Positions 22,081-64,000 of a stretch of DNA of 64,000 nt are shown here, piece after piece (the first letter of the stretch is position 1; each line of letters begins with the position of its first letter). The stretch spans positions 1 to 64,000 of the IMG/VR virus record IMGVR_UViG_3300043399_000297; one strand, given 5' to 3'. Both the position numbers and the translations under genes were made by a program. The notes under the pieces are model-generated. The model was given only the letters and a program-made list of their open reading frames with translations, was not told where the DNA came from and searched no databases.

Positions 22081-22102
22081 ATTTCTTCCTATTATTATGG
22101 TA

Positions 22103-22131: not shown

Positions 22132-22164
22132 CACTATTGGGTAAAAATACACAGTTTTTATTGC

Positions 22165-43900: not shown

Positions 43901-46900
43901 ACAGTAGTAGACAAAACTGTTTTAGAAGATTTGGGTATTACATTATATACAAATACGCAAGTTATTTCTTGCCCTCATAAAGAGGGTCCTACTCAGTTTG
44001 GTAAAAAGATCAAGTTCAATGAGTTTGGTTCAGCAGCGATCGGCGCCCCAGTTGGTACTCGTTATCAAGCTACTACTTTCGACTTCACAGATGATGAAAA
44101 TCTTCATAATGATACAGTGTTTGACAATAATGCTACACGCTTTATTGATCAATGGCCTAACGCCGGCGCAGTATATATGTTTGACTTGTTGGCTAACTAT
44201 ACTAATGACACAGTTGATCCCGGTAAGTTTGCTTATGCTCAGCCTGTCAATAGCGATAGCGAATTGTTTGGAAATAGTCCATATTATGGTATAGCAATTG
44301 ATTTTAACGAGTATAATGTAATAGTAGGTGCTCCTAATTATCTACCGTTTATTGATAGTGGTCAGGCAACTGTATACACTAACTACACTGGTGTCAGAGA
44401 TTGGAGTGAATATAGACAGTCAAGTGCAATAGTTGATGTTAGTAAGATACAGGACACTCAGTTGTTCAGCAACTTAACTAACAACACACTAGTAAATCTT
44501 GATTATATGGATCCCTTGCAAGGCAAACTATTAGGCGTAGTAAGAGAAAATATTGATTTCGTAAGTAAAGTTGATCCAGCCTATTATAATAGTGATAGTT
44601 CTCCGTTAACAGGAAAAGTTTGGGGAGCGGATAATATTGGTGAAATTTGGTTTAACACAGAAAATGTTAGATTTATTAATTATCATCAAAATGATGTAGT
44701 ATACAACAGTAAGTATTGGGGAACATTATTCCCCGGTAGCGATGTTGCTATGTACACCTGGGTTATAAGTGACGTTCCCCCGTCAAATTACCCTGGACCC
44801 GGCATACCATATGACTTTAATTTATATTCAGTTGGCGGAACACTTAATGCAAGCAATGTTGTAGTACCTGTATACTACTTCTGGGTACGCAATTCAGGAA
44901 TTGTTACACAGAAAAGAAATAAGACACTAAGCGATATTACATTAGCTCAATATGTTGCAAACCCTCAGAATTCTGGAATTGCATATATGGCACCTATACT
45001 ACCAAATACATTTGCATTGTATAATAGTGGTCAATATATAAATGCAGATGATACTGTGTTCCACTTGGGATATGCTAATGGCACGAGTGATGATGTTTCA
45101 CACAGTGAATACGCATTAATAAGAGAAAATTTTGAAGATGATTTCTTGCCGGGATTACCGTTAACTGTTAATACATCTCACAATTTAGCACAGCACGGAT
45201 TATATCCTGCAATATCAAATGAAGAACCATATTCACTATATGCGAGAATGCTAGACAGCTTAAGTGGTTGCACTTTCAACACTGACCCTGAGCAGCTAGC
45301 TGGTCAAGTTGTACCTGATCCGTTCTTACCAATTAATTATCAAAGTGGTATATTAGTAAGACCTAGACAGAGCTTCTTCTATGATAGATTGTTGGCACTA
45401 AAGAATTATATCACATATGCCAATGAAGTGTTAATGAATTATCCTATCACTGAATTGAAGCCAGACTTGTATTTCTTATTCACTAGCGGTGAATATTATA
45501 ATACAGCAGACTATTGGGAATACACTGATTGGTATTATCCAGGTTATAACAGTGCCACGAAGCCTACATTGCAAGTTCGTGAATATGCAGACTTGTCTGG
45601 GTTAAATGTTGCAGTAAACACTATTGTTAAGGTACTTACAAACGGAGCCGGACTAAATGAATTCTATCGTTATGATGGACAAGATGTTTGGACAAGAGTA
45701 TACTTGCAAAACGGTACAATACAGTTCAAGTCAAGTTTATATGACTATAGTGCAAATAAGATAGGTTTCGGAGGTGACTTCTTTGACACTGCTACCTTTG
45801 ATAATTATCCAAGCACAGAAACACGTTATATTATACGTGCGTTGAATGAGCAGATTTATACTGAAGACTTATTGCCTTATCGTAACAAGAGTTTGATATT
45901 ATTGTTTGAATACATTCAATCTGAAACTATTGAATCTCAGAATTATTTACCGTGGCTTAATAAAACAAGCTTGATGGATGTATCACATATCATACGCGAA
46001 CTAAAACCATATGAAGTATTCAAGAGTGACAATCAAGTGTTCCTCGAGGGTTATATTAATGAAGTAAAACCCTACCACGTGGTTATCAAAGATTTCTTAT
46101 TCAAGTATACCGGAACCGAAGAATACAACTTGTCAAATCTTACTGACTTTGATGTTCCGGCAACATATAATGAAAATTATAGAAAATATATTAGTCCTCA
46201 ACTAGTGTATTCAACTCCTAATAATGAATATGAGTATGAACTTAATAATGATATTTGGAATACAGCTCCATACTATCAGTATTATAATAATAGGGGAATG
46301 ACATTAGATGGTCAGCCCGAGTATTTGATTACTAGACTTTCAACATATGTATCAATAGGTGACAACTATCTTGTGGTAGATAACTCAGCTGGCTTCCCTA
46401 TTAACGGAACTATAACCATTGATGAAGAAATTATTAGTTATGCTTATGTTGATCGTGCATACAATATACTATATGGTCTAGTAAGAGGTTTACAGGGCAC
46501 AAGACAAGCTACCCACCTTCCGGGCAGCGAAATCTATATGGATCTTCCCCCGATTGTAGTGTTAGATGGTGGCAGAAATTATGTGAACCCACCCTCAATA
46601 AAATGCGTATATGATTCTGCATTCCCTGAACCAATTATACCGGCCATACTAGAGCCTATTATGGCAGCAGGTACGTTGATAGGAGTTGACGTAGTAGAGC
46701 CAGGCTATGGTTATATGGCACAGCCCACTATTGAAATTGCCCCGTCAAGTGAAATATATTTTTCACAAACAGCAATTAACTCACTGCTTCACACTATCAA
46801 TCTATCTAATGTTAATTTGTATACCGGTGACATTGTAAGATTCAAGGCAGGGACAAATGGAGTTGCGCCGACTAAGTTGGTAGATGGCGAATGGTATTAT

Positions 46901-49900
46901 GTCAACGTATTAGAAAGTGTCCCATCTTATATCATTGCATTGTATTCTAATTATTCTGATGCTATCAAAGACCACGATAGAATTGAAATTGCAGTAAATG
47001 GAACGTCATCGGACATGGCATTGTTGCCCGGGGCAAAGGCATATGCAATTACGTCAAGCTCTCCTACTAGAGAGAATAATATTAAGCTTAAGTTTGACAG
47101 AACAACATATACATCACAAGTATTAGACTGGAAAGAAAGTTCTTACTATAGTGCATATTTTGCAGGCAAATATTATCAACCTGAATCCTTAGCAAGCTCT
47201 AGTTATACCTTAGAAAATACAATGCCTAACATCGGTGATCTACTTGCTAGTGCTAGCGGTGTAGTATTTGAAATTGCTGAGGTAAATGACGATCAATATA
47301 TCGATTGGTCATCATATATTAGATATGTCGCTGAAACTTCAAGTGCCAATAATAGTATTAGACTAATTCCGCAAGATAACAACAATGATCCATTAAATCC
47401 TGAGGTAAATAATTCAGGAACTACAGTAGGTTTCTATAAGAATATGCCTATTAAGTTTGTGGGCGCGGTAATAGGTAACTTAGTAGATAGCACAACTTAC
47501 TATGTTAGTGAGATATTAAGCGAAATTGAATTTACTGTTAGTGAATCTATCGATGGTCCTGTATTTGCATTAACAAATGGTTCTTGGCCAGATAATAGCA
47601 CACTGTTGAAGTGCTATACCGGTAATATCAATAGCACAACTATACTCACTGTAAACTATCCTAGCATACTAAATGTCACGAACACCACTAAAACAATTAA
47701 CAGTATTACGGTACCATTAACTTCAATTGGTACGGGCGGTACAATTGGTTTTTATCCTACACTTCCATTATTCTTTACAAGCAATGGAAATAACAGTGTG
47801 TTTGGAAACATAGTAGAGAACAGACCTTATTATGTAAACACTATTATAGATAATGAGAACTTTACTATTTCTGAAAGTGAAGATGTAATTTCTACTACAG
47901 TAACCGAAACAAATCAAACAACTGATACGGTTACGGTTGATTCTACTGAAAACTTTAATATTAATGATCCTATTATCTTTAATAATTTTGTATTTACAGC
48001 CGGAGACTTTGTAATAGGACAAACCTATACTATATTAACAGTTGGAACTACAGACTATACAAGCATAGGATCAATATCAAATGTTGTAGGAACCACCTTC
48101 ACTGCTACTGGAGTTGGTAGTGGTACTGGCACAGCATCTTCTAACTTGTTCGGTACTATTGAGTCTGGTACCCTTTATTGTGTAAACGAAATTGTTAGTA
48201 GCACTGAACTCAAGATTTCTACAAAAGCTAACTTTGATGTATATGCATTGAACGATCAAATAGGTACGGCTACACTAACCGATCAATCAAACACGGTAGC
48301 ACTAACGACGGCTGAAGGGTCAATGTATGTCAATGTTTCTCTGCCAGTAAGCCCTGGCCAAATTGACGGACAGAAATTCAGTTTTTATAAAACATCAGGA
48401 CAATATGTAGAATTGAGCGGCAGCGTAAGCAATCTAATTGAAACTGATATTAACGCTACAATTAGTAGTGTGGATAGAGTTGCATTAGCATTCAACACTG
48501 ATATGACTAATTTTTATGTCAATATGCCAATCGAAGTCTCAGTAAATGTTGGTGGATTGGTGACAGGAACACCTTATTATATTACCGAATATTCAGGAGA
48601 ATTAATCCCTGATCCAGATCCTGAAAATGTAGGTAAATATATTAATAGACCAAACATTCAGGTTACTGTATCAAATACTAGTGATATAGAAAATGTCCTA
48701 ACTTGCGATACTACTGAGAGTTTATTCGTAGGTATGCCAATTGTATTTTCTGGAGTAGGATTAGGAGGAATAACGATTGGTCAACAATATTTTGTAAGTT
48801 CAATTAATGATAGCACCCGTTTTACTATTGCATCAACGAAAGAATCTACGACAACAGTAACACAAGTTGATTCAATTACTCTCAATATAACAGTGAATGA
48901 TACCTCTATCTTTAATGTCGGCGATGGCGTAATGTTTAGAGGAAGTATAGTAGGCGGGCAATTAGATTCAACGACAACATATTATGTTGAAACTATTGGG
49001 GTCAATACTATTAAAGTTACTGATACCAAGTATTCAAATGGAACATTGGGAGCGCCAATAGATCCGGGCACTGGTACTGGTAATTTTACTATTGCTAACA
49101 TCGTAGTTCTTACTGCTGCGTCGGGAACAATGATTGGTACTGGTGATCCTTATATTAAACTTTCCAGCACACTATCACCTAGTACGCCTGTCGCACTAAC
49201 TGACGATAACAGCGGATCATCAAAGATGATTCAATATCCTGATCCACTTGGTTCCTATCCTACATTCTCAATATCATATCTGTTGGGAGGATATAGAGTA
49301 TTAATTATTAATTCAAGCAGCGGTTTTGCAATTAATAATACTATAACTATACCGGGCACTGATGTAGGAGGTTCAAGCCCTGCTAACGATATTACATTAA
49401 TTGTAAATCAAATTAATACGACCGGCGAAATTCTTGATGTAATTGCTAATGGTACTGTGCCTGTAACAAGTAATCAATATTATCTACAAGTTCGTTCGCC
49501 TAATACACTAGCAGTATATAGTGATCCATTAATGGATATTCCAGTAAGTTATAATGATTTTGATTATGTGGGCTTCACTAAAGTAGGCGTTTCGCAAGTT
49601 TCTAGCATTGGTAATTATATCACCGTCACTGACTCAAGTGTGTTTGCAGAGAACGATGAAGTCATATTCACTGGAACAAGCTTAGGTAATATTGTAATAG
49701 GCAAATCTTATTACATTTATTATATCTTCAGTCCCACAGTTGTTATAGTAAGCGAAACCCCTTATGGTCCAATGTTTGACCCAGGTAATGGAACAGGTAG
49801 TGCAAGTGATTTGACTATGGCAAAAGCTGGAAGCTTTTGCGTACTTCCTGAACCATTCTACTTCAATCAATCAATTGTTAGATATAATAATAGACTTTAT

Positions 49901-52900
49901 GTTTGCGTTGTTTCAAATAATGACAATACATTTGTTCTCGGTAAGTGGGAACCGATCGGCAGCGATTATCCATTGCTCAATGCATTAGATAGAGCAGAAG
50001 GTTATTATCAGCCCACTGTCAATATGCCGGGCCGTGATCTAACACAATTGTTCGAAGGAATTACATACCCCAATCCTATTGTAAGAGGCAATAAGTTTGA
50101 ACCCGATCAGCAATATGATATCGATACTATCATAATTGATAGTCCGTTCTACCCAACAAACGTAGACATTTCAAGCGTCATATACAACAATGGAATATAT
50201 TTAGCAAGTGCTAATCTACCCAACTATAGCGCAATAATTATTAGTTTGGACGGCGATACTTGGGGCATAGGTAAACTAACAGAGTTTAATATTGATACTA
50301 CTGATATAATATGTCTAAATGGAAATTATATAATCACATCTACTAATGTTGTAACTCCTGTGTTCAAGAGTGTAGATGGGATAAACTGGTCAGTAACCGG
50401 CGGCTATATTCCATATGGTGTCTATGATGAATATGGTGTTCCTGTAGTAACCAAACCAATTGGCACAGTAGGACTATCACTTAATGCGATAACATATTAT
50501 AACGGTAAGTATATTGCAGCAGGAAATAATATTGTAAACAGTGATGACTTGTATACTTGGAGAGCATTGACTCAGTTTGAAACTGCGTTTGACATTAATC
50601 TATATGATATAGCAAGTGTTAATATTCCTGGATTCGTCGGCGTCGTTTCGGTTGGTTCTGGTAAGCGATATAGTTATGAGAACGGATTTACAGAATTAGT
50701 AGATACTGATATCGTAGCCTATAGCAATGATGGTGTTAACTATTCCCGTTCCAACAGTTTTACCAACAAAGCATTGTATGGAGTAACTAGCGATTCAAAT
50801 ACTATTGTTGTAGTAGGTGAAGCTGGCGTAATATATTATAGTTTAAATGGTGCAAATTATTTAGGTGTTAATGAAGTGGGTGTCACTTCCATTAATGCAG
50901 CTACTAATCAAATCAATGTAAACAATACCGCTGGATTTAATGTCAATGACACTGTTCAGTTTACTGGCTCCTTTGGAACAATAACTGCTTACACCACTTA
51001 CTATATCAAAACTATTGATTCATCTACGCAAATTACAATTTCTGAAACATTAGCTGGTACTACTAAACAATTAGTAGACGTTACTGCTGGTAATTTTATA
51101 ATTGGTCAAACTTATATCATTACAAGTGTAGGGACAACTAACTTCATTGCTATAGGTGCAAGTAGTAATACAGTTGGTGTAACATTTACTGCTACTGGTA
51201 TCGGCACCGGCGACGGTACAGCATCAATCGTAATTAATGGTGTAATAGGTGGCACAATACCTGAGCAAACATTAATGAATTACTATGATAGTCTAGATCC
51301 TACTCCTAGTAACCTTAATAAGGTTTGCTATGCAAACGGTATCTTCTTTGCAGTAGGCGATAACGGAACAGTGAGAACATCAAGCGATGGCATTGTTTGG
51401 ACTACTCAAACAACAGGTACTACAGAAAATCTCACGAGCGTAAGTTATGTTGACAATAGTAAGTTTGTTATTGCTGGTGACAACAATATAGTATTGTTTA
51501 CTGAAGATAATGGGTTGACTTATACATCTAATGTTGTCTTCGAAGTCGCAGCACCTATCTATACTATAAAGGGCGCCGACTTCCCATATGGATATGGTCC
51601 TGAAGAGTTAGTACCGGGCAACATTGTTGATAACTTGCAGATGATTGTCAACACGAGACCCGGCACTAACTGGCCCGGTCCCGAATATGGACACACTGGC
51701 TTCAACGTAGTATCGGTAGAAGTAATTCCATCTCAGCAATATCAAACTATGTTTAGCTTTAAGAACATAGTAGAAACTCCGGCGCAAGTTAGACTACAAG
51801 TAATTAATGGGTCTACATATTTAGGTACTACTTTATATCCTACTGAGTATACTATTGACTGGGTAAACAAAATAATTACACTTAATGAACCATTAAACTT
51901 TTTCCCAATAAAAGATATATTAAGAATCGATGTATATGAAGTAGGCAACGGTGATCAATTAGTTAAAGCTAATACTGACACTGATCCTATTCGTGTAAAT
52001 CCAGAAACAATGTTTACTGAGATTTTTGTAAACTGCGACTACAATCAACCAATCTTCTTGGGAAGTGGTGTTATTAAAACTGGAACAAGTAGTGTAGTTG
52101 TGCGTGCATTTGAAACTAACGAAATCACTGACAGAATCACTTGCGATGATGTTTCACAGTTCACGCTCAACACCGGTATTACTTTTCAGGGACTACCGTT
52201 CGGAGGCCTTGAAGAAAATACAAACTACTACGTAAAAAGTATTAGTTACGCAACCAACTCAATTACTGTTTCTCTTAGCTATAATCCAGTTACTGGCTTA
52301 GCTGGACCAACTGTAGAATTGACTACAGCAACTGGTGAGATGTATGCTAATATACAAAATGGCAATGGAGTTCCCTGGACTGATCCAATTGTATATCACA
52401 ATGGAAACAAATTAGTATTGGGAACAACCGGATTAGTCACGAGAACAAAAGCGAGCAATAACGCATTAACGACAAATACAACTGCTGGTTTAATAGTGGG
52501 TACTCCTATTAGTTTCTGTGAATGTATATTTGGTGGAATCATCGAACCATTCGTCACATATTATATTGCAACTATCGTTGATGACAATGAGTTCACTATC
52601 AGCGCGACACAAGGTGGTCCAATATTACCACTTAATGATTCAACTGGTGGAACTACATTTATTACAAATGATTATGCGTTTGGTATTCAACCAGATGGTA
52701 TTTCAGCTAAAATTATGTTCCCTGTTCCAACTTATACTAATAATACTGATTATATAGTTTACTCATTGTTAGGTGAAACAGCACCAGAACAATATGGATA
52801 TAGTATACCTGAAACTCAATATTTTGTTGGCAACGGAGCAACGTCTCAGTTCAATTTAGATAACTTTGTAGGTGAGAATAATCCCAATAATGCAATCGTA

Positions 52901-55222: not shown

Positions 55223-55366
55223 ATGAAACGTAGCAAAATAGAAAATAATAAGCCTTCCTCTAATAGAAAACCAAACGAAGTGGGCGGATTTTATTTTTCT
55301 TCTGGAATTAAGATTTTTGACCCGAACACTCAAGAAGTTTTGGTTCAAAAAAGAGGGGATAGTTAA
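55223..55366 (+). CDS. Small protein (47 aa, MKRSKIENNK...KIFDPNTQEVLVQKRGDS)
   Basis: Read by hand; own late promoter, TAATG overlap with next gene, motif shared with next gene. Confidence 0.75.
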   Translation: MKRSKIENNKPSSNRKPNEVGGFYFSSGIKIFDPNTQEVLVQKRGDS

Positions 55367-55986
55367 TGTCAGTTATTAATCTGTCATACAAGATTGAGGG
55401 ATTTCTCAAGATTTATGACCCCAACAACGGGGAAGTATTTGTAGATAAAAAGAATGCTATAAATTACGAGAATATGTCTGAAGCCATTGCAGACACGCTA
55501 AGCACTCGTGGGTATGGGGAAATTTATCAGATGGCATTTGGTAATGGCGGAGCCAGCGTAGATGACACTGGAGTTATTACATATCTTCCTCCTAACACAA
55601 CTGGTCAAAATGCCGCATTGTATAATGAAACTTACGCCAAGATCGTTGATGACACGAGTGTTTTCAATCTTGACCCTACTCGTAATAAGATGACAGTTTA
55701 TCATACAACAGGAACACTGTATTCTGATATTTTAGTTCAGTGTCTACTGGACTACGGTGAACCCGCCGGACAAGCAGCATTTGACAATAGTACGCAGACA
55801 GATGGCGCATATGTATTTGATGAACTAGGGCTATTAGCTAACTATGGCACTGATAACAATGGTAATGTAATCACTAGATTATTAACTCACGTAATATTTC
55901 ACCCGGTACAAAAATCACTAAACAGACAAATTCAAATCGACTATACAGTTAGAATTCAAAGTCTAACTAATCTAGTTACAATATAA
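55366..55986 (+). CDS. Virion structural protein (baseplate wedge/fibre-attachment candidate)
   Basis: MAFGNGG, FDELGL, THVIFHPVQKSLNR pattern; between giant protein and fibres. Confidence 0.65.
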   Translation: MSVINLSYKIEGFLKIYDPNNGEVFVDKKNAINYENMSEAIADTLSTRGYGEIYQMAFGNGGASVDDTGVITYLPPNTTGQNAALYNETYAKIVDDTSVFNLDPTRNKMTVYHTTGTLYSDILVQCLLDYGEPAGQAAFDNSTQTDGAYVFDELGLLANYGTDNNGNVITRLLTHVIFHPVQKSLNRQIQIDYTVRIQSLTNLVTI

Positions 55987-56000
55987 TATTGGAGTAAGCA

Positions 56001-58469
56001 GTGTCATATACTATAGTAAGGACAAATGGTTCAGTATTAACAGAAATTCCTGATGGTGTAGTAAATACTACGAGTACTCCTTTGTCTTTGCCGGGCCGTA
56101 ACTATTCAAGTTACGGTGTAGTGATGGACACTAATTTTGTTCACGCATTAGAAAATTTTGCAGATGGTAATGTACCAAACAACGCCATTAGAGGTCAATT
56201 GTTTTTTAATACTAATACAGAAACTTTGTATATTTGCCCCACAGACGGTGAATCTAACTTAAGTAACTGGCTCAAAATTATTTCTTCAAACGATGATAAT
56301 TTAGAATTTGGAAACATTACATTAACCGGCAACATATATGCCAATAACGCTGTAATGACCAATGATGTAATTGGAAATCGGTTAATAGGTAATTATCTAA
56401 CTGTTTATATTAGTGCTAATGTTAATGATGCAACATTGACCGGCTCATCAAATATAGCAAATATACGCACTAATAATATTACAACTGGCTCTAACATTAC
56501 ATCGGGAAATCTTACTGGCAATTGGAATTTGAATGGTAACGTTTCTGTACCAAGCGGAAATGTGTCTGCTAGCGGTGTTAAATCAGACAACTATATGTAT
56601 GCTAATGGGGTGTCTATTAACTTCTTGCAGGCAGCAGGATTAAATGGCTACATTCAATTTAATACATCAGGAAATTTAAATGCAAGTGCGGGATTAACTT
56701 TTGATACTGCTACGAGCAATCTTAACCTATTAGGTAATTTAGGTGCCGGCGGCGACATTACCGCATCTGGAAATCTTTCAGGTCCTGCAGCCAATATAAC
56801 AAATATTCCTGCTGCCAACTTACAAGGAACTATCAATAGCACTGTTCAAGCAAATATCACTCAACTAGGCACACTAACTTCAGCAACAGTTCTAGGAACC
56901 ATTTATTCTGGTAATTTAATTGCTAGTTTAAATGTATCAGCAGCAAGTTTAACTGGAAGTTTAACTACAGCCGCGCAGCCTAATATTACTTCAGTTGGTA
57001 CATTGACTGGCTTAGCTGTTAGCGGTACGATTAATAGTGGTAATTTAACCGGCGCTAATTTGATATCAGGCAATTTTATATCTGGTACATTGACTACAGC
57101 CGCACAACCTAATATTACAAGTGTAGGAACATTATCATCATTAAATGTAAATGCTAATATTACTTCAGGAAATGTTTATGCAAATTCAGGTAGAATAGGA
57201 GCTTCCTTACTATCAGGCACATTAACTACTACTGCTCAACCAAACATTACTAGCTTAGGAACATTATCAAGTGTTACTGTAACAGGAAATATAGATTCTG
57301 GAAATGTAAATAGTAATTTTTCAGGCGACGGTTCTCGTTTGACAAATATACCCGGTGCAAATGTTACAGGTACGGTTTCCTCTGCTACTACAGCTATAAG
57401 TGCGACAAGTGCCACAACAGCAGGGACTGTTACAACCGCCGCGCAACCAAACATTACTAGTTTAGGTGCATTAGCATCTCTGATCGTAAATGGCAATGTC
57501 AATTCAGGAAATGTAATATCTAATTTTGAAGGGGACGGCTCTAAGTTGACGAACCTACCGGGTGCAAATGTTACTGGAAAGGTCCCCAACGCAATATACG
57601 CTGACATAGCTGGCACCGCTGGCCCGGCTGACACTGCTAATACTGTTATACTTGCGGCACAACCCAACATTACAAGCGTGGGAACTTTAATATCACTAAA
57701 TGTCACAGGCAATATAAACGGTGCAAACTTGACGGGTAAGCATTTTGGTAATGGAGCTCCATTAAGCAATATAACAGGTGCTAATGTAAACGGTCAAGTG
57801 CCCAACGCATTGGTTGCTGGTACGGTTTACACTAATGCTCAACCAAACATTACTAGCACCGGTACATTAATCAGCCTCAATGTAACCGGTAATATTAACG
57901 CAAATAACTTTGTTGCAAGCAATTATTTTGTAGGCAACGGTTCAAAGCTTACAAACATCAATGCTGCTAATATCGTAGGAAATGTCCCCAACGCTAATTT
58001 TGCAACTACAGCGGGATATGCAGCGAATGCAGGAAATGCCCTAAATGCAGACACTGCAAATTATGCCAATAGTGCAGGGTCCTTTGGCGGAGTTAACGAC
58101 ATTGCGCACGGCGGCACTAGCGGGAATACTGTATTAGCAGCAGGAACTAATTTAGGCATCATTGGCGTTGGACAGACTTGGCAAAATTTAACAGGCAGCC
58201 GCACGAGAAACACCTCATATCGAAACACAACAGGCAGGCCCATTCAAGTTATAGTTCAAACTGAGTTTGAAAGCGACGGAGATGATTGGTTTGACGTATC
58301 CTCCGATTCAACCACTTGGATTACATTAGGTATGCTAAGTGGAGGAACCGCTTATGGCACAAATGAAGGCGGCCCAGCAATCAGCGCAATTATTCCTGCA
58401 GGACACTATTATAGATGGAGAGCAAGTGATGCCGATGTGAACTTGTTATATTGGTCAGAATTGCGATAA
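56001..58469 (+). CDS. Tail fibre protein with AQPNITSxGTL repeats
   Basis: GTG start with GGAG RBS; GRNY/ENFA/GQL N-terminal anchor; seven repeat units; C-terminal GVGQTWQ...YRNTTGRPI tip. Confidence 0.8.
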   Translation: MSYTIVRTNGSVLTEIPDGVVNTTSTPLSLPGRNYSSYGVVMDTNFVHALENFADGNVPNNAIRGQLFFNTNTETLYICPTDGESNLSNWLKIISSNDDNLEFGNITLTGNIYANNAVMTNDVIGNRLIGNYLTVYISANVNDATLTGSSNIANIRTNNITTGSNITSGNLTGNWNLNGNVSVPSGNVSASGVKSDNYMYANGVSINFLQAAGLNGYIQFNTSGNLNASAGLTFDTATSNLNLLGNLGAGGDITASGNLSGPAANITNIPAANLQGTINSTVQANITQLGTLTSATVLGTIYSGNLIASLNVSAASLTGSLTTAAQPNITSVGTLTGLAVSGTINSGNLTGANLISGNFISGTLTTAAQPNITSVGTLSSLNVNANITSGNVYANSGRIGASLLSGTLTTTAQPNITSLGTLSSVTVTGNIDSGNVNSNFSGDGSRLTNIPGANVTGTVSSATTAISATSATTAGTVTTAAQPNITSLGALASLIVNGNVNSGNVISNFEGDGSKLTNLPGANVTGKVPNAIYADIAGTAGPADTANTVILAAQPNITSVGTLISLNVTGNINGANLTGKHFGNGAPLSNITGANVNGQVPNALVAGTVYTNAQPNITSTGTLISLNVTGNINANNFVASNYFVGNGSKLTNINAANIVGNVPNANFATTAGYAANAGNALNADTANYANSAGSFGGVNDIAHGGTSGNTVLAAGTNLGIIGVGQTWQNLTGSRTRNTSYRNTTGRPIQVIVQTEFESDGDDWFDVSSDSTTWITLGMLSGGTAYGTNEGGPAISAIIPAGHYYRWRASDADVNLLYWSELR

Positions 58470-58485
58470 GAAGACAAAATATTAT

Positions 58486-58493
58486 GATAAATA
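58486..58493 (+). promoter_or_regulatory. Late promoter GATAAATA
   Basis: Recurrent motif followed by GGAG RBS. Confidence 0.7.
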
Positions 58494-58512
58494 GATTTAA
58501 CGGAGTTATAAA

Positions 58513-59733
58513 ATGGCATATGTAATTGTTAAAAGCGATGGTACTACATTAACTACCATTGCTGATGGTACAATTAATACAACAAGTACCTCATTAGGGT
58601 TGCCAGGTAGAAATTATGCAGGATATGGACAGACAGTAGATACTAACTTTGTTCATATGACGGAAAATTTTGCTGCTGCTACCCCACCTAGTAATCCTCT
58701 GAGAGGACAATTATGGTATAACACAAATACTAGTACACTATATGTTTGTCCAACGGATGGTGAATCAAACGCACTAGCTTGGACTTCAATTTCAACTACT
58801 GCTTCAGGCGGTACAACTACATTTGGCAATGTAACTGTAGCTTCCGAACTTGATGCTAATAATGCAACATTTACTAACAATGCAAATGCCAATGCTATTA
58901 ATAGTAACTACTTGACTGTTTCTGCAAACGCAAATATTTCTAATGCTAATATTACTAATGCTAACATCTCCTCTCTTACTACAACCAACATTACAACAGG
59001 ATCACTTACTACAGCAGGTAATTTGACTGGTGTTTGGACACTGAATGGTTCAGCAGGCGGTTCGGGTGCAAATTCATTAATTTTGAATACTGGTGGTATT
59101 TATATCAATAATACTGGTAATTTATACGGTATTAAAACTGACAAGTATATGTGGGCAAATGGCGACCCGGTATCTTTTGCAGGTACTTACAGCAATTCAA
59201 ACGTAGCTTTGTATCTCCCTGTATACAACGGTAATATCTTAACAGTAAGGACTACAGCAACGACATTAACAACTGGTGCTAACACTACACCGGGCACTAT
59301 GACAGGTAACTGGACACTATCAGCCGGTTCAAGACTCAACGCTACTTACGCTGACCTTGCAGAACGTTTTGAAGCTGATGAATCCTACGCTCCAGGAACT
59401 GTTGTAGAAATTGGCGGTACTAAAGAAATCACCGCAGCGAAATATGAATTGAGTGAAGATGTGTTTGGCGTCATAAGCAACAGTGCTGCGTATTTAATGA
59501 ACGCCGGCGCAGGTTCCGACAACACTCACCCTGCAGTTGCTGTAACAGGACGTGTTCCTGTTAAAGTAACTGGTATTATTAAAAAGGGTGATAGACTAGT
59601 AAGTGCAGGAGAAGGTCTTGCACGAGCCGCTAAGAAGGGTGAAGCAACTGCATTTAATACAATCGGTAGAGCGTTAGAAGAAAAAACAACCGGTGGTGAC
59701 GGATATGTCGAAGCCGTCGTTATGATAAGATAA
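58513..59733 (+). CDS. Short tail fibre/spike with C-terminal intramolecular chaperone (autocleaving) domain
   Basis: Same N-terminal anchor as 56001; YADLAE...GTVV...GRVPVKV...KGDRLV...IGRALE C-terminal pattern. Confidence 0.75.
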   Translation: MAYVIVKSDGTTLTTIADGTINTTSTSLGLPGRNYAGYGQTVDTNFVHMTENFAAATPPSNPLRGQLWYNTNTSTLYVCPTDGESNALAWTSISTTASGGTTTFGNVTVASELDANNATFTNNANANAINSNYLTVSANANISNANITNANISSLTTTNITTGSLTTAGNLTGVWTLNGSAGGSGANSLILNTGGIYINNTGNLYGIKTDKYMWANGDPVSFAGTYSNSNVALYLPVYNGNILTVRTTATTLTTGANTTPGTMTGNWTLSAGSRLNATYADLAERFEADESYAPGTVVEIGGTKEITAAKYELSEDVFGVISNSAAYLMNAGAGSDNTHPAVAVTGRVPVKVTGIIKKGDRLVSAGEGLARAAKKGEATAFNTIGRALEEKTTGGDGYVEAVVMIR

Positions 59734-59745
59734 TAAGGGTATACG

Positions 59746-60699
59746 ATGACTTACGCACAATATGGTTTAATACAAGCCGCAGATTATAATACACTAGTTG
59801 GTGGTAATCCAGTGACAACATCTGGTACCTTAAATACGGTATGGGCAACGGGCGGCTCAAATGCAGGATATGGTCAAACAGCAGAAGCAAATGTTGCTAT
59901 AGGAGACAATGTAGCCGCAGCAAAATGGGCTAACCTAGTAAACAAAACTTCTAACAGCGCAAGTCATCAGGGAACTAGCATTACGGCAGTAACAGCCCCT
60001 GCTTCAGGAGGATCAATTACATATTTGTCTGCTATACCAACTAATCTAACAACAATTTACACTAGTAGATTAAACGCAGCAACCCAGGGAACTACTTCAG
60101 GAAATACAGTTACGACTGTTTCAACGTGGTCAGATAAAGCAACTTGGACACATACTGCAACGTTTGCAAACGGAGATGCAGCAAGATATTTCTTTAATTC
60201 AGGCGGACAACTAAAAGTTAGTATGACACATCCAAGTGGCACTGGTATCGACTTGTTGTTGAATAACCTAGCTAGTAATGTAGGTACAGTTGTGTTGTCC
60301 GCCCCTACTAGCGGAACTATTACGGTAGCCAGCACTTCCTATTCTGGTATTACTAAAGTGGGCGGCGGCGGCAATGCTCCTAGTCCATATTTGACAAATA
60401 ATGGATATTATGCATTAACTACTAGTAACGCAAACGTGTTCTTACAGACAGCAAGTACGGGACCGTCTGGATATCTCAGCACAAACGTCAATATTTTAAT
60501 TAAGAGTAACGGTACACAAGGATCAAATAGTGATGCCGGATCTATTATCACAATTTATACGGTTTGGGATGAAATTCCAAACGGACTTACGGTATCGTCA
60601 GGTTCTGCGGTTACACTAACAGTTGTACCGCCGGAAACAACATATCTAGCTAATAGTTGGGGAACCATTACACTTGCCGGATCAGTGTCGGTCGTATAA
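59746..60699 (+). CDS. Virion structural protein (Ser/Thr/Gly-rich)
   Basis: GYGQ and ARYFFNSGG motifs; within fibre cluster. Confidence 0.65.
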   Translation: MTYAQYGLIQAADYNTLVGGNPVTTSGTLNTVWATGGSNAGYGQTAEANVAIGDNVAAAKWANLVNKTSNSASHQGTSITAVTAPASGGSITYLSAIPTNLTTIYTSRLNAATQGTTSGNTVTTVSTWSDKATWTHTATFANGDAARYFFNSGGQLKVSMTHPSGTGIDLLLNNLASNVGTVVLSAPTSGTITVASTSYSGITKVGGGGNAPSPYLTNNGYYALTTSNANVFLQTASTGPSGYLSTNVNILIKSNGTQGSNSDAGSIITIYTVWDEIPNGLTVSSGSAVTLTVVPPETTYLANSWGTITLAGSVSVV

Positions 60700-60723
60700 T
60701 TTTTAATCACTATGGGGTATCCA

Positions 60724-60731
60724 TCTAAATA
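60724..60731 (+). promoter_or_regulatory. Late promoter TCTAAATA
   Basis: TAAATA core followed by AGGAG RBS. Confidence 0.6.
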
Positions 60732-60747
60732 CTCTTAGGAGTAAAAG

Positions 60748-61062
60748 ATGGATACTAAAACTTTAATAGCTGAAGCAAAAGCTAGATTCAACCATAACTC
60801 GGCAAAAGAGTATCTTAAAGAAAAATATGAAGCAAAACTGCTAGTCGCAGAACAGGGTGGACTGTGGAAAGCCGATCAAGAGACTATTGCATTTCTAGCT
60901 GTTATGTCAAATGATTGGGATGATAGAGTAGTCATAATAGATACCTTTCAAAATCCAGTACTTGTAACCCGCAGTGAATTACTAACTAAGCTGAAGGAAG
61001 TTTATCGTAGCGTGATGGCTGACTGGTATAATGAGTGGAAAGAACTAGAAAGTAAACGATGA
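60748..61062 (+). CDS. Hypothetical protein (possible fibre assembly chaperone)
   Basis: 104 aa, strong RBS, ATGA-coupled to GT-like gene. Confidence 0.6.
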   Translation: MDTKTLIAEAKARFNHNSAKEYLKEKYEAKLLVAEQGGLWKADQETIAFLAVMSNDWDDRVVIIDTFQNPVLVTRSELLTKLKEVYRSVMADWYNEWKELESKR

Positions 61063-61868
61063 GTCGTGGCGTAATACTGTTCGCGTTTAACAGTCCCAAA
61101 TATAACTATTATGATATGGCAGAATATACTGCTAGAAGAATTAGACATTTTTTAGATTTGCCCGTCACTTTAGTTAGTGATGAAGATTCTGTGCCAGATA
61201 GAGTTAAACGAGGAACGTGGGACAAAATAATACGTGTAACGCCGGATAAAAATAACTTTCGTGATTGGGGGATGTGGATAAACAAAGGCAGATATATGGC
61301 CTATGAATTGAGCCCCTACGAAGAAACCATCCTATTAGACGTAGACTATATTATCAACTCAGATAAGTTGTTAACTCTTTTTGAAATTGATACTGATTTT
61401 TGTTGTCACAATAAAACTAATTTTTTAATGCACCCCGGAGTTCCTCAAGAAATATTGAGCGCCTACAGCTATGAGACATTATGGGCAACAGTTGTGATGT
61501 TTCGCAAGAGCAACCGCACACAACAAATCTTTCAATCTTTAGAAATGGTACAAAAGAACTATGAACACTACGCGAACATTCATAATTTTATCGCCCCTGT
61601 ATATCGTAACGATTATGCTCTCACTCTTGCCCATCGTATTGCTAACGGTCATAGTGTTGGTCCCCGCGATTTTATTCCTTGGGATTTACTGCACGTTGGA
61701 AAAAATACTCAAGTTTTTAAGACTGGAGAAGACGAGTTCGACACTGAATATACAGTGATGTTTGATAACTGGCAAAAAGGTAAGATTCGTAAAGAGTATA
61801 TCTTTATTAAAGATATGGATTTTCACGTTATGAACAAAGACCTATATGCGGAGATGATCAATGGATAA
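61059..61868 (+). CDS. GT-A fold glycosyltransferase-like protein
   Basis: SPYEETILLDVD (DxD), WATVVMFRK, YRNDYA, H-K motifs. Confidence 0.65.
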   Translation: MSRGVILFAFNSPKYNYYDMAEYTARRIRHFLDLPVTLVSDEDSVPDRVKRGTWDKIIRVTPDKNNFRDWGMWINKGRYMAYELSPYEETILLDVDYIINSDKLLTLFEIDTDFCCHNKTNFLMHPGVPQEILSAYSYETLWATVVMFRKSNRTQQIFQSLEMVQKNYEHYANIHNFIAPVYRNDYALTLAHRIANGHSVGPRDFIPWDLLHVGKNTQVFKTGEDEFDTEYTVMFDNWQKGKIRKEYIFIKDMDFHVMNKDLYAEMING

Positions 61869-62610
61869 GGGTTTTGTTATTATGGCACAGGGTTCTGATT
61901 ATGAAGTTTGTGCAGAATTATTGAAGAAATCTATATTGAATGTAATGCCCGACAGCAATATAACTATCGTTACTACGTCGATGCTTCCATACGGAGACCA
62001 AGCCCCGGATACAGATTGGAAGTTGCAGAATGATTGGCAAGTATACGAAGCTAGTCCATATGAATATACTATAAAACTAGAAGCTGATATGTATATTCCT
62101 AGATCAATCGATTATTGGTGGGATATATTAAAGGATAGAGATTTAGTAGTATCAACCACTATTAGAAATTTTAAACAAGAGATTTCAGATATCAAAGCAT
62201 ATCGCAGATTTATTATTGATAATAATTTGCCGGATACATATAATGCAATTACATATTTTCGTAAAAGCGAATTAGCAGAAAAATTCTTTAAGATTGTTAG
62301 AGATGTGTTTGAGAATTGGGATGTATATAGAAGTTCTCTCAAATGCAATACAAATGAATTATGCACTACAGACTGGGCTTACGCTATTGCTAGTCATATA
62401 TTAGGAGTTGAGAATACTACATTGCCTCCGTTTAAAGAAATGTCTATGGTTCATATGAAGCAGTTTATTAATAGTCTTCCAACTGAGAATTGGACAGATA
62501 TATTCATTCACGAAATATTACCGCACACGTTTAGAATCAATACAATTGCACAGATGTATCCGGTTCATTACCATATCAAGAGTTTTGCTAAGGAAGCATT
62601 AAATGGATGA
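61861..62610 (+). CDS. GT-A fold glycosyltransferase-like protein, paralog of 61059
   Basis: SPYEYTIKLEAD, YNAITYFRKS, TDWAYA, VHMK, HYH motifs. Confidence 0.6.
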   Translation: MDKGFVIMAQGSDYEVCAELLKKSILNVMPDSNITIVTTSMLPYGDQAPDTDWKLQNDWQVYEASPYEYTIKLEADMYIPRSIDYWWDILKDRDLVVSTTIRNFKQEISDIKAYRRFIIDNNLPDTYNAITYFRKSELAEKFFKIVRDVFENWDVYRSSLKCNTNELCTTDWAYAIASHILGVENTTLPPFKEMSMVHMKQFINSLPTENWTDIFIHEILPHTFRINTIAQMYPVHYHIKSFAKEALNG

Positions 62611-62932
62611 TCAAGAAGATTATGTAATCATTTGGGAACCGCCTGTTCTTGAAAAACCAGAGTTTCGTTTATACTATGACGACAGAGGTAATGTAATTAC
62701 ATATACTTGCGAGAAGCTTGATGGCAATTATATCATCATTGATGCACTGACGTTTGCAGAAGCCAGACCCGACGTAAAAGTGGTAGATAATAAGTTAGTA
62801 AAGATCGGTACCGGTTCTGTCATATCTCGTTTATTTTCATCCGACGAAGGTATTATGTGTGAAAAAGAAGACATAAGTATTGTTACTAATTCAGACGGAT
62901 GCTTTTATAAACTAAGAGTAGTTAAAGTTTAA
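62603..62932 (+). CDS. Hypothetical protein (109 aa)
   Basis: Overlaps upstream gene by 8 nt; EFRLYYDD motif. Confidence 0.65.
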   Translation: MDDQEDYVIIWEPPVLEKPEFRLYYDDRGNVITYTCEKLDGNYIIIDALTFAEARPDVKVVDNKLVKIGTGSVISRLFSSDEGIMCEKEDISIVTNSDGCFYKLRVVKV

Positions 62933-63656
62933 ACCCGCCGCTTATCTCAATTATTTGTGCGGTAATGTGTTTTCCTGCATTAGAGCAGAGTAGACTTGCC
63001 ATCTCCGCTATTTCTTCGGGTTTTCCCAATCTATTAAGCGCAGTAATACTTAACACTTCACTCAACATAGCCGGATCATTTGTTACGTATTCTGTTGTCT
63101 CACCGATAGTAAATCCTGGGCTTATTGAATTTACTGTTATCCCTCTGCTACCCAAGTCTGCTGCCATTACTCTAGTAAACGCATTCAATGCATTTTTGGC
63201 CATCGTATATACTATGATGTTTGGATCTGTTATTCTTGCGCCAGCAGATGAAATATTAATTACTCTACCTCCATCATTTATATTGTGATAAAAAGCGCGA
63301 GTCAAGAAGAACGCACTCTTGACATTATTGTTCATAATTTCATCGAAGAATTGTTCATCGGCTTTCAATATGTTACCATAATCACTGCCGCCTATATTGT
63401 TAACAAGTATGTCAATGTTATTGACTTTGTTTAATACAAGTGATGCTAGTTCCTCGGCATCTTTTTGTCCGGTTAATTTAATTTTAATTGCATCAGCTTG
63501 CCCGCCGTTTTTTATAATTTCTTCAACAGTATTCTTTGCAGCAACATCATTGTTAGCATAATTAATGATTACATTTATGCCCTGTTCAGCAAGTTTTAGT
63601 GCAATACTTTTTCCTATTCCGCGGCTTCCGCCGGTAATTAGTGCAGTTTTTGTCAT
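62922..63656 (-). CDS. Classical short-chain dehydrogenase/reductase (FabG-like)
   Basis: TGGSRGIG, NNIG, NISS, YTMAK (YxxxK), SPG, RLGKPEEIA motifs. Confidence 0.92.
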   Translation of the reverse strand: MTKTALITGGSRGIGKSIALKLAEQGINVIINYANNDVAAKNTVEEIIKNGGQADAIKIKLTGQKDAEELASLVLNKVNNIDILVNNIGGSDYGNILKADEQFFDEIMNNNVKSAFFLTRAFYHNINDGGRVINISSAGARITDPNIIVYTMAKNALNAFTRVMAADLGSRGITVNSISPGFTIGETTEYVTNDPAMLSEVLSITALNRLGKPEEIAEMASLLCSNAGKHITAQIIEISGGFKL

Positions 63657-63661
63657 AGAGA

Positions 63662-63697
63662 TATTTATTATTTACTATGTCAGAAGTAAAGTAAATA
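63662..63697. promoter_or_regulatory. Divergent late-type promoters AATAAATA (- 63662-63669) and AGTAAATA (+ 63690-63697)
   Basis: Each lies exactly 5 nt from an ATG (63656 minus, 63703 plus). Confidence 0.6.
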
Positions 63698-63702
63698 ATG
63701 CA

Positions 63703-64000
63703 ATGGACGACATTATTGATATTGCAGACTTAGACGTAATATACCTAAGCTATGACGAACCTCAAAAAGAAGAATTCTGGCTCAAGATTAAGAATATGGT
63801 GCCTTGGGCTGTCAGAGTAGATGGTGTTAAGGGAAGTGACGCTGCACATAAAGCAGCAGGGGAAGCATCATCTACTGAGAGATTCATTCTCATTGACGGT
63901 GACAACTTGCCCGATGAGAACTTCTTTAATTTACAATTAGACTTTACCGATAAAGACCCTAACTACAAGTTAGCGCAGTATCGTTGGAGAGCAGTCAATG
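63703..64000 (+). CDS. Partial glycosyltransferase-family-2-like protein (runs off right edge)
   Basis: Read by hand: MDDIIDIADLDVIYLSYDEP...RVDGVKGSDAAHKAA...FILIDGDN (DxD); open to window end. Confidence 0.65.
   Translation, partial: MDDIIDIADLDVIYLSYDEPQKEEFWLKIKNMVPWAVRVDGVKGSDAAHKAAGEASSTERFILIDGDNLPDENFFNLQLDFTDKDPNYKLAQYRWRAVN

What the first reader, a model, noticed from the sequence alone, without database searches (positions are those of the whole stretch)
56001..64000. Late-expressed glycosyltransferase-like cluster beside sequon-rich tail fibres: possible virion glycosylation system
Seen: directly after the fibre genes, under TAAATA promoters, lie two paralogous GT-A-like genes (DVD and EAD at the DxD position), two small ORFs, an SDR and a third GT2-like gene (DGD). 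The 822-aa fibre has about 35 N-x-S/T sequons by eye, including one in every AQPNIT repeat. Established: phage-encoded glycosyltransferases glycosylate virions in some mycobacteriophages. Inference: these enzymes modify fibres/virion (or are themselves glycan-binding virion components) rather than DNA. Caveat: the fibre is N/S/T-rich, so many sequons are expected by composition.
Basis: partly seen in the sequence, partly recalled or inferred. Interest (0 to 1): 0.6.

Follow-up and report, generated by a model that had tools for sequence, protein, structure and literature searches.

The report
Phage glycosylation island beside tail fibres
A freshwater jumbo phage carries, directly after its tail-fibre genes, a deeply conserved set of sugar-transferring and sugar-tailoring enzymes that most likely coats part of the virus particle with an unusual glycan, though the target has not been shown.

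Summary

The cassette p104, GT, GT, p109, p314, N-twitch radical SAM follows the fibre genes in about 90 related phage contigs and in Ralstonia phage RsoM2USA. Cassette-protein identity to the furthest relatives falls to 23-39%. It is preceded by a conserved late-type motif, CCATCTAAATACT.

The system is much larger than reported. It runs on for about 27 kb with seven radical SAM enzymes, a nucleotide-sugar dehydrogenase, an aminotransferase-like fragment and a carbamoyltransferase.

- The SDR is a private insertion on the opposite strand, not part of the module.
- The sequon excess is weak (36 observed, 25.7±4.2 expected) and looks like beta-strand periodicity.
- A DNA substrate is disfavoured: the phage has a true thymidylate synthase and no TET/JBP.
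- Virion glycosylation is the best reading (about 0.4) but is unproven. Host-envelope remodelling is the main rival.

The parts
21187..22152 (-). gp55-like late sigma factor. Context: it gives a basis for reading TAAATA motifs as late promoters.
   Evidence: phrog_12791 'sigma factor for late transcription', 4.4e-72
34949..55207 (+). Giant 6752-aa ORF of the baseplate/fibre module (context).
   Evidence: ORF list. It follows a gp6-like wedge protein. By position it corresponds to the giant virion protein gp355 of PA5oct. It is preceded by GATAAATAT.
55366..55986 (+). 206-aa conserved protein that precedes the fibre genes.
   Evidence: phrog_11259, 6.1e-68. Present, 61-94% identical, in 64 of 80 related loci.
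56001..58469 (+). 822-aa tail fibre with six AQPNIT repeats and 36 N-x-S/T sequons. Candidate acceptor.
   Evidence: phrog_6942 tail fiber, 3.1e-14. N-terminus 48% identical to the 406-aa fibre. Sequon tests.
58513..59733 (+). 406-aa fibre protein with a Peptidase_G2-like C-terminal (intramolecular chaperone type) domain.
   Evidence: Pfam PF11962, 1.8e-4, below its cut-off. PHROG hits. The C-terminal third is 50% identical to PA5oct gp359, a mass-spectrometry-detected virion protein.
59746..60699 (+). 317-aa Ser/Thr-rich protein, always the last gene before the cassette. Probably a virion/fibre protein and a candidate acceptor.
   Evidence: Present in 80 of 80 related loci. The N-terminal 191 aa are about 30% identical to PA5oct gp360, detected in virions by ESI-MS/MS. 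In RsoM2USA it is fused to a fibre N-terminal domain.
60721..60733 (+). Conserved promoter-like element CCATCTAAATACT, 22 nt before p104.
   Evidence: A TAAATA motif, nearly always within CTAAATAC, lies about 19-27 nt before the start codon in 57 of 60 distinct relatives, while the flanks vary. ATAAATA is 20-fold enriched upstream of genes in this genome.
60748..61062 (+). p104, a small helical protein and the first gene of the cassette.
   Evidence: Found in 77 of 80 loci at the same position. No family match.
61059..61868 (+). 269-aa retaining-type GT-A (GT8-like) glycosyltransferase, D94-V-D96.
61861..62610 (+). 249-aa paralogous GT-A glycosyltransferase, E74-A-D76.
   Evidence: hhalign against the 269-aa family: 98.7%, E 3.9e-16. 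Invariant E74, D76, D171, H236, H238 and K240.
62603..62932 (+). p109, a small conserved protein of the cassette.
   Evidence: Found in 76 of 80 loci at the same position. No family match.
62922..63656 (-). FabG-like SDR. An insertion private to this genome, not part of the conserved module.
   Evidence: Pfam adh_short_C2, 6.6e-54. Absent at this site in all 80 related loci; one weak 30% hit elsewhere in L015.
63703..64000 (+). N-terminal part of p314 (full gene is contig 63703-64647). GT2-like GT-A N-domain with invariant D65-G-D67, followed by a helical C-domain. It is the best-conserved protein of the cassette.

Best explanation
The window ends inside a virus-encoded, cytoplasmic glycosylation island.

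Core cassette: a seven-gene block kept in one order, p317, p104, GT8-like GT (269 aa), paralogous GT (249 aa), p109, GT2-like p314, N-twitch radical SAM enzyme. It starts right after the last fibre gene and is read from its own late-type promoter.

Accessory genes: about 20 kb more follows downstream. It holds more N-twitch radical SAMs, two B12-radical SAM methyltransferase-like enzymes, a nucleotide-sugar dehydrogenase, a DegT/PseC-like aminotransferase fragment, a NodU-type carbamoyltransferase and a five-copy unknown domain family.

Proposed mechanism:
1. The tailoring enzymes make unusual activated sugars (uronic, amino, carbamoylated or C-methylated).
2. The three GT-A enzymes transfer these sugars stepwise, in the cytoplasm and late in infection, onto a phage-encoded acceptor.
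3. The most likely acceptors are the fibre proteins encoded just upstream (p317, the 406-aa and the 822-aa proteins), before virion assembly.

Shown: the folds, the catalytic motifs, the synteny, restriction to viruses, the promoter motif, and the absence of membrane or export proteins. Inferred: late timing, the chemistry of the sugars, and above all the acceptor.

For: (2) Linkage to the fibres. The order p206, fibres, p317, p104, GT, GT, p109, p314, rSAM is kept in 80 of 80 IMG/VR loci (the three small proteins missing from a few), in 11 contigs binned into MAGs of several phyla, and in RsoM2USA, where cassette-protein identities are only 26-39%.

(3) The family appears only in viruses. Every 'bacterial' hit is a phage contig carrying the same cassette. 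The cassette proteins are as conserved as the fibres, or more so. This fits an acceptor that travels with the phage better than host-specific glycans.

(4) Promoter. CCATCTAAATACT is conserved before p104 in 57 of 60 distinct relatives. The same TAAATA core precedes the portal, baseplate, giant-protein and fibre genes, and the phage encodes a gp55-like late sigma factor.

(5) Glycan-building context. The island holds a nucleotide-sugar dehydrogenase, an aminotransferase-like fragment, a carbamoyltransferase and B12-rSAMs. They keep the same order in 3 of 4 near-complete relatives.

(6) None of the 28 proteins from p206 to p1515 has a TM-like segment. There is no flippase, polymerase or lipid-carrier transferase.

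(7) p317 and the 406-aa fibre have homologues that were detected in PA5oct virions by mass spectrometry.

(8) Precedent. Mycobacteriophages glycosylate capsid and tail-tube proteins with their own GTs (Freeman 2023, as summarised in PMC12363180).
Against: - No direct evidence for any acceptor. No proteomic or RNA data exist for this phage lineage.
- The RsoM2USA proteomics covered only the most abundant gel bands and did not look for glycans.
- PA5oct has homologous fibre and p317 proteins but no cassette, so glycosylation is not needed to build them.
- GT8 enzymes are also the classic LPS-core transferases. Those are soluble or peripheral, so the lack of TM segments does not exclude a lipid-linked acceptor.
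- The island sits at the edge of the structural module, with non-structural genes after it.
- The TAAATA motif also precedes genes of unknown class, so 'late' is inferred from T4, not shown.
- The sequon excess is weak, and the known Asn-glycosylating enzymes are not GT8-like.
- What the seven radical SAM enzymes do is unknown. They may point to a different chemistry.
Confidence: 0.42

Rival explanations
1. Host-envelope remodelling. The GTs act at the cytoplasmic face of the inner membrane on host LPS core, O-antigen or capsule intermediates. This changes the infected cell's surface, either to block superinfection or to stop progeny from sticking to debris.
Against: The core cassette is not sporadic. 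It is fixed in order and position next to the fibre genes across phages recovered from very different habitats and MAG bins, whereas envelope glycans differ between hosts. There is no lipid-carrier transferase, flippase, polymerase or any other TM protein. A late-type promoter is a poor fit for superinfection exclusion.
Confidence: 0.25
2. Soluble product. The island makes a glycosylated small molecule, or a radical-SAM-modified peptide, that is released or used inside the infected cell. The GTs decorate that scaffold.
For: There are seven radical SAM enzymes. They include N-twitch/SPASM-type and B12-dependent methyltransferase-like ones, with weak similarity to RiPP maturases and to KedN5. 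The carbamoyltransferase is of the kind found in antibiotic pathways, and Iyer et al. propose secondary metabolites for cyanophage clusters with carbamoyltransferases. Two small conserved ORFs (p104, p109) could be precursors or carrier proteins.
Against: No precursor-peptide features, protease or exporter were seen, and no TM proteins. p104 and p109 lack the Cys-rich cores typical of SPASM substrates: 0% and 2.8% Cys. Strict linkage to the fibre genes and a late-type promoter are not explained.
Confidence: 0.12
3. DNA or nucleotide modification. The GTs glycosylate modified bases in phage DNA, with radical SAM enzymes building the modification.
For: Phages do glycosylate DNA, and radical SAM enzymes take part in some thymidine hypermodifications (my own knowledge, not tested here). 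rSAM319 has weak viperin, MoaA and QueE-like matches, all nucleotide-acting families, at E 1e-4 to 2e-7.
Against: The only ThyA-family gene is a true thymidylate synthase (357 bits against a cut-off of 327), and each of five genomes has just one. No TET/JBP gene passes its threshold in five genomes. The fold is GT-A/GT8-like, not the GT-B of the T4 alpha- and beta-glucosyltransferases. The position and promoter are those of structural genes.
Confidence: 0.06
4. The GT-like proteins are themselves virion components, glycan-binding or receptor-modifying fibre accessories, rather than enzymes acting inside the cell.
For: They lie directly behind the fibre genes, and the fibre-module proteins in this lineage are numerous.
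Against: The metal- and nucleotide-binding residues are invariant across a family diverged to about 30% identity, which argues for catalysis with an NDP-sugar donor, available only in the cytoplasm. The proteins carry no fibre-attachment N-terminal domain like the one shared by the fibres. They are co-conserved with radical SAM and sugar-tailoring enzymes.
Confidence: 0.05

Closest known systems
Mycobacteriophage virion glycosylation (Che8, Corndog, Myrna; Freeman et al. 2023, as summarised in PMC12363180 and PMC12582341)
   Same: Phage-encoded glycosyltransferases act in the cytoplasm. The hypothesis here is the same kind of virion decoration.
   Different: There, glycans on capsid and tail-tube proteins were shown experimentally. 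Here nothing is shown. The hosts differ (Actinobacteria against probable Gram-negatives). By my own knowledge of that work, no radical SAM or sugar-tailoring island of this size is known there. No sequence relationship was detected: no phage in the isolate collection other than RsoM2USA has these proteins.
Chlorovirus PBCV-1 capsid glycosylation (A64R and partners) and Mimivirus fibril glycosylation clusters
   Same: A virus-encoded, host-independent cytoplasmic glycosylation machinery that combines several GT-A enzymes with sugar-tailoring enzymes. A64R is the best Foldseek match of the p314 N-domain (E 5.7e-4), and a Mimivirus R699 domain is also among the matches.
   Different: The matches are marginal and tied with many GT2-type enzymes. 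Those are eukaryotic giant viruses. Radical SAM enzymes are not part of those systems, to my knowledge.
GT8 family of retaining glycosyltransferases (glycogenin, LgtC, GlyE, XXYLT1, LARGE1)
   Different: About 10-15% identity. No match to the Pfam GT8 model or to any other GT model. The paralogue has ExD. Donor and acceptor are unknown.
LPS/capsule-modification gene clusters of jumbo phages and cyanophages (Iyer et al. 2021, PMC7824862)
   Same: Clusters of paralogous GTs with sugar-modifying enzymes and carbamoyltransferases in T4-like jumbo phages, with content that varies between relatives.
   Different: Those clusters are described as sporadic and polymorphic. Here a core cassette is fixed next to the fibre genes across a whole clade, carries N-twitch radical SAM enzymes, and has no nucleotidyltransferase or kinase detected in this genome.
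Bacterial flagellin and pilin glycosylation islands (for example Campylobacter, Pseudomonas)
   Same: Genes for unusual sugar synthesis and transfer sit beside the structural gene of the filament they decorate. A conserved core sits beside a variable tailoring part. Glycosylation is cytoplasmic, before assembly (my own knowledge).
   Different: Those are cellular systems with different enzyme families (Maf/motility-associated factors, pse/leg pathways). Only a PseC/LegC-like aminotransferase fragment is seen here.

Membership tests
GT-A fold glycosyltransferases, GT8-like (269-aa and 249-aa proteins) | Single Rossmann-like GT-A domain | tested here: met
GT-A fold glycosyltransferases, GT8-like (269-aa and 249-aa proteins) | DxD metal/nucleotide-sugar motif at the end of the central strand | tested here: met
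   D94 and D96 are invariant in 92 sequences and follow strand 89-93. The paralogue has invariant E74-x-D76 aligned to them.
GT-A fold glycosyltransferases, GT8-like (269-aa and 249-aa proteins) | Distal His as third metal ligand, with a nearby Lys contacting the phosphates (as in LgtC and glycogenin) | tested here: inconclusive
   H256 and K260 (269 aa) and H236, H238 and K240 (249 aa) are invariant and lie in the expected C-terminal strand-helix. No residue-level superposition was available.
GT-A fold glycosyltransferases, GT8-like (269-aa and 249-aa proteins) | Sequence membership in a curated GT8 model (Pfam Glyco_transf_8) | tested here: not met
   No Pfam, NCBIfam or PDB sequence match. 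Only 2 of 92 family members touch Mannosyl_trans3, at E 0.0018. It is therefore a new sequence family with a GT8-like fold, not a filed GT8 member.
GT2-like inverting GT-A (p314) | GT-A N-terminal domain with DxD | tested here: inconclusive
GT2-like inverting GT-A (p314) | Match to Pfam Glycos_transf_2 | tested here: not met
   No Pfam or NCBIfam hit. The Atlas gives only a 0.87 lead.
Phage virion glycosylation system (mycobacteriophage type) | Phage-encoded GTs expressed with the structural genes | tested here: inconclusive
   The position after the fibre genes and a conserved late-type motif are shown. Transcription timing is not; no RNA data exist.
Phage virion glycosylation system (mycobacteriophage type) | Glycans covalently attached to virion proteins | not testable with these tools
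   This needs glycoproteomics of virions.
N-linked (sequon-directed) protein glycosylation | Sequon enrichment in the acceptor, and a known Asn-glycosylating enzyme (GT-C oligosaccharyltransferase or GT41 NGT) | tested here: not met
   N-x-S/T z is 2.5, against 1.5 for the mirrored motif. D/E-x-N-x-S/T is seen once against 1.2 expected. Relatives' fibres have a mean z of 1.2, and some have no excess. No membrane protein is present, so no GT-C enzyme. GT41 was not searched for specifically.
T4-type DNA glucosylation | GT-B alpha/beta-glucosyltransferase plus a hydroxymethyl-pyrimidine pathway | tested here: not met
   The fold is GT-A. The ThyA homologue is a true thymidylate synthase. There is one ThyA-family gene per genome and no TET/JBP gene.
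N_Twi_rSAM (NCBIfam NF033640), the cassette partner just beyond the window | Score above the curated cut-off, with an N-terminal twitch/SPASM-like domain before the radical SAM core | tested here: met
   Scores of 306, 377 and 357 bits against a cut-off of 170. SPASM matches at residues 18-82 precede Radical_SAM at about 130-300. There are 2 to 5 copies per related genome over the cut-off, and none over it in 14 control genomes.

The most novel reading that the evidence does not exclude
A whole clade of T4-like jumbo phages, found in freshwater, marine and soil samples and including the cultured Ralstonia phage RsoM2USA, carries an autonomous virion-glycosylation machinery comparable to that of giant eukaryotic viruses. 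Radical SAM enzymes (the N-twitch family and B12-dependent methylases) tailor the sugars or the fibre proteins themselves. The variable accessory genes diversify the glycan between phages.
Probability: 0.3. Interest if true: 0.8.

Novelty: new variant of a known kind. Interest (0 to 1): 0.6.

Why it matters
Virus-encoded glycosylation of the particle has been shown for chloroviruses, giant viruses and a few mycobacteriophages. It has not been shown for T4-like phages of Gram-negative bacteria. Here a very abundant environmental jumbo-phage lineage (thousands of clusters at 90% identity for each cassette protein) devotes about 27 kb to a glycan-building island locked to its fibre genes.

If the target is the fibre, this would be a new layer of host-range, stability or defence-evasion biology.

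One cultured phage, RsoM2USA, carries the core cassette, so the question can be tested directly at the bench. If the target is instead the host envelope, the finding would still define a conserved, late-expressed surface-remodelling system.

Tried and rejected
Searches that gave nothing or could not be run:
- Family scans (Pfam, PHROGs, NCBIfam) and PDB sequence searches gave no GT name for any of the three proteins. Only structure prediction resolved them.
- DNA search against isolate phages: no near match.
- Protein search against isolate phages: only RsoM2USA has the cassette.
- The bacterial-genome scan returned only MAG contigs, and all of them turned out to be phage contigs carrying the cassette. 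There is therefore no bacterial context to learn from.
- The sigma-70 promoter and terminator scan gave counts no higher than shuffled sequence.
- Public runs: only the source freshwater DNA sample holds the region and no RNA run does.
The viral fold library was unavailable. Neither is evidence for or against anything.
- Freeman et al. 2023 is not held in the library. It is cited through PMC12363180 and PMC12582341.
- p317 has no PDB or family match.

Ideas rejected:
- The SDR as a sugar-modifying member of the cluster. It is a private insertion on the opposite strand.
- p314 as a sugar nucleotidyltransferase. It has a DGD and SYDEP-type motif rather than GxGxR.
- p314 as a relative of the GT8-like pair. 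hhalign gives 1.4%.
- Sequons as evidence for N-glycosylation.

Full report
WHAT THE WINDOW IS. The window is the first 64 kb of a 244,022-bp IMG/VR virus record, estimated 71% complete. The only public runs that hold it are from a freshwater metagenome. The phage has a T4-like core. The window encodes a portal, a gp55-like late sigma factor (21187-22152, minus strand), SbcCD-like nucleases, and baseplate hub, gp25-like and gp6-like wedge proteins. A 6752-aa ORF follows (34949-55207), then a 206-aa protein and the fibre genes. Relatives reach 333-363 kb, so this is a jumbo myophage lineage. Ralstonia phage RsoM2USA (343.8 kb) is the only cultured phage that shares the genes in question.

CHECK OF THE OBSERVATION.
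- fibre, 822 aa (56001-58469, GTG start)
- fibre, 406 aa (58513-59733), N-terminal 220 residues 48% identical to the first fibre
- a 317-aa protein
- p104
- a 269-aa protein with D94-V-D96
- a 249-aa protein with E74-A-D76
- p109
- an SDR
- a gene with D65-G-D67, which is cut by the window end and is 314 aa in the contig

The SDR is on the minus strand. The genes p104, 269, 249 and p109 overlap at their start and stop codons, so they form a single transcription unit.

THE THREE GLYCOSYLTRANSFERASE CANDIDATES. No Pfam, PHROG, NCBIfam or PDB sequence model names any of them. The exhaustive representative search found 654 clusters related to the 269-aa protein. Among the 150 listed, none is longer than 295 aa, so no fusions were seen.

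The 249-aa protein is a definite paralogue. hhalign gives 98.7%, E 3.9e-16 over 179 columns, and LLDVDY aligns with KLEADM. The earlier and shallower tests gave 91% and a BLASTP E of 7e-4. Its own family keeps E74, D76, D171, H236, H238 and K240 invariant. It therefore looks like an active enzyme with an ExD variant, not a decayed copy.

THE UNIT IS LARGER AND DEEPLY CONSERVED. Beyond the window the plus-strand run continues to about 92.6 kb. It holds:
- three paralogous N-twitch radical SAM proteins (NF033640; 306-377 bits against a cut-off of 170)
- a fourth, shorter radical SAM protein
- two B12-binding radical SAM proteins, one of them KedN5-like
- a nucleotide-sugar dehydrogenase
- a DegT/PseC/LegC-like aminotransferase fragment
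- a NodU/CmcH-type carbamoyltransferase
- two weak DUF6071-like proteins
- four proteins that share an unknown domain of about 200 aa, five copies in all
- a 1515-aa protein whose C-terminal part resembles p314

For the unknown domain, the Atlas offers only leads: a GT10-like score of 0.78, and a structural neighbour fused to an NDP-sugar epimerase/dehydratase. After the island come non-structural genes (a MoxR ATPase, a VWA-metallopeptidase, thymidylate synthase).

In 80 related IMG/VR loci, the order p206, fibres, 406-aa fibre, p317, p104, GT269, GT249, p109, p314, rSAM488 is kept. The two GTs, p314 and p317 are present in 80 of 80, p104 in 77, p109 in 76, and the rSAM in 74, with the shortfall in the last partly due to contig ends. 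The same order is seen in a contig whose GT269 homologue is 32-34% identical. It is also seen in 11 contigs that sit in MAG bins labelled as six different bacterial groups but are plainly phage. RsoM2USA genes 355-348 keep it too, at 26% (GT269), 33% (GT249), 39% (p314) and 36% (rSAM) identity.

By contrast, the SDR is absent from this site in all 80 loci, and the HNH endonuclease after p314 occurs in only 2 of 80. Both are insertions private to this genome. The accessory part varies. The dehydrogenase and the carbamoyltransferase are present, in the same order, in three of four near-complete relatives. They are absent from the fourth, which has a canonical GT2 in that region instead. The number of N-twitch paralogues over the cut-off ranges from 2 to 5 per genome.

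TIMING. ATAAATA is 20-fold enriched in the 70 nt before genes. It precedes the portal, baseplate, giant-protein and 406-aa fibre genes. With a gp55-like sigma factor present, a T4-type late promoter is the natural reading, but that is an inference.

Before p104 the motif is CTAAATAC, at -22. Across 60 distinct upstream regions in relatives, 57 keep a TAAATA motif at this place, nearly always inside CCATCTAAATACT, while the surrounding intergenic sequence varies. That is good evidence for a functional element serving the cassette. Its temporal class has not been demonstrated. No RNA data exist, and generic sigma-70 and terminator scans are uninformative.

THE SEQUON ARGUMENT. The 822-aa fibre has 36 N-x-S/T against 25.7 +/- 4.2 expected from composition (z 2.5, p about 0.011). 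Several points weaken this:
- Six of the 36 are copies of one repeat.
- The middle residue is I, V or L in 26 of 36.
- The mirrored motif S/T-x-N is also raised (z 1.5).
- Adjacent N-S/T is depleted (z -3.0).

This is the signature of alternating polar and hydrophobic residues in beta-strands. The PglB-type extended sequon is at expectation. The 406-aa fibre gives z 1.7, p317 gives z -2.0 and the giant protein z 0.2.

In 94 distinct fibres from relatives, the mean z is 1.2, against 0.8 for the mirror. For the 17 longest it is 1.7 against 0.4. Two long fibres from cassette-bearing contigs show no excess. There is thus a mild, inherited excess that neither supports nor excludes Asn glycosylation. 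GT8-like enzymes are not known Asn transferases, so O-linkage to the Ser/Thr-rich fibres would be at least as plausible. That last point is my inference.

WHICH ACCEPTOR?

Against DNA:
- The fold is GT-A.
- The single ThyA-family gene is a genuine thymidylate synthase (357 bits against a cut-off of 327).
- No TET/JBP gene is present.

Against a dedicated exported polysaccharide: none of the 28 proteins from p206 to p1515 has a TM-like segment. Peripheral LPS-core transferases would also look like this, however.

For a phage-encoded acceptor:
- The cassette is restricted to viruses.
- It is locked to the fibre genes at great evolutionary depth.
- It is found in phages from dissimilar habitats and bins.
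- Its enzymes are at least as conserved as the fibres.

p317 and the 406-aa fibre have PA5oct homologues (gp360, gp359) that were detected in virions by ESI-MS/MS. In PA5oct they close the structural module, and no cassette follows. The cassette is therefore an addition to a pre-existing fibre module, not a requirement for building it.

The published reading of GT clusters in jumbo phages is host-surface diversification or secondary metabolism (Iyer et al. 2021, PMC7824862). That remains the main rival. It fits the variable accessory genes better than it fits the fixed core.

VERDICT. These are real glycosyltransferases in a large, conserved, probably late-expressed glycan-building island next to the fibre genes. 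DNA is an unlikely target. Virion (fibre) glycosylation is the best single hypothesis, at about 0.4, but it is unproven. The sequon count and the SDR do not support it. The cassette is undescribed in the literature I could search, and it can be tested in RsoM2USA.

Noticed in passing
window 34949-55207 (+): A single 6752-aa ORF, among the longest phage genes. It sits between the gp6-like wedge gene and the fibre genes, is preceded by GATAAATAT, and corresponds by position to the giant virion protein gp355 of PA5oct.
   Followed up: partly
window 55224-55367 (+): A 47-aa ORF just after a GATAAATAG motif. Its second half resembles the N-terminus of the following 206-aa protein (the motif G-F-x-x-I-(F/Y)-D-P-N). 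PA5oct has a small gene at the same place.
   Followed up: no
window 62922-63656 (-) and contig 64649-65242 (-): A FabG-like SDR and an HNH homing-type endonuclease are inserted on the opposite strand, one on each side of p314. They are absent at these sites from 80 and 78 of the 80 related loci, so they are recent mobile or moron insertions inside an otherwise fixed operon.
   Followed up: yes
L002 5257-9212 (contig 65257-69212) and relatives: Three tandem paralogues of the N-twitch radical SAM family NF033640, whose SPASM/twitch-like domain lies N-terminal to the radical SAM core. There are 2-5 copies over the cut-off per related phage genome and none over it in 14 control bacterial and archaeal genomes. 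No function is known.
   Followed up: partly
contig 72240-75447, 77422-78570, 83187-84908 (L084): Four proteins (369, 693, 382 and 573 aa) share an unknown C-terminal domain of about 200 aa, five copies in all. The Atlas gives weak leads to GT10 fucosyltransferases and to a viral protein fused to an NDP-sugar epimerase/dehydratase.
   Followed up: partly
contig 88057-92604 (L099 57-4604): A 1515-aa protein closes the island. Residues 1320-1482 are 29% identical to p314 residues 30-222 (E 8e-11), so it carries a second copy of the GT2-like domain inside a large protein that is otherwise unassigned.
   Followed up: no
L089-L098 (contigs filed under MAGs of Haliscomenobacter, Fischerella, Polynucleobacter, Rickettsiales, Neomarinimicrobiota, Bifidobacterium): Every GTDB 'bacterial' hit to the GT269 family is a phage contig with the same fibre-plus-cassette order, one of them 335 kb long. 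These are jumbo-phage contigs binned into bacterial MAGs. The bin labels may or may not hint at hosts.
   Followed up: partly
window 56001-58469, residues 642-662: The fibre repeat gives a weak, sub-threshold match to the Pfam Chlorovirus glycoprotein repeat (PF06598, E 0.0013). It could be chance or a shared beta-structure repeat.
   Followed up: no
whole contig, 70 nt upstream of genes: TAAATA motifs fall into two distance classes from the start codon, about -10 to -12 and about -22 to -31. The first class leaves almost no room for a leader or a Shine-Dalgarno sequence.
   Followed up: no
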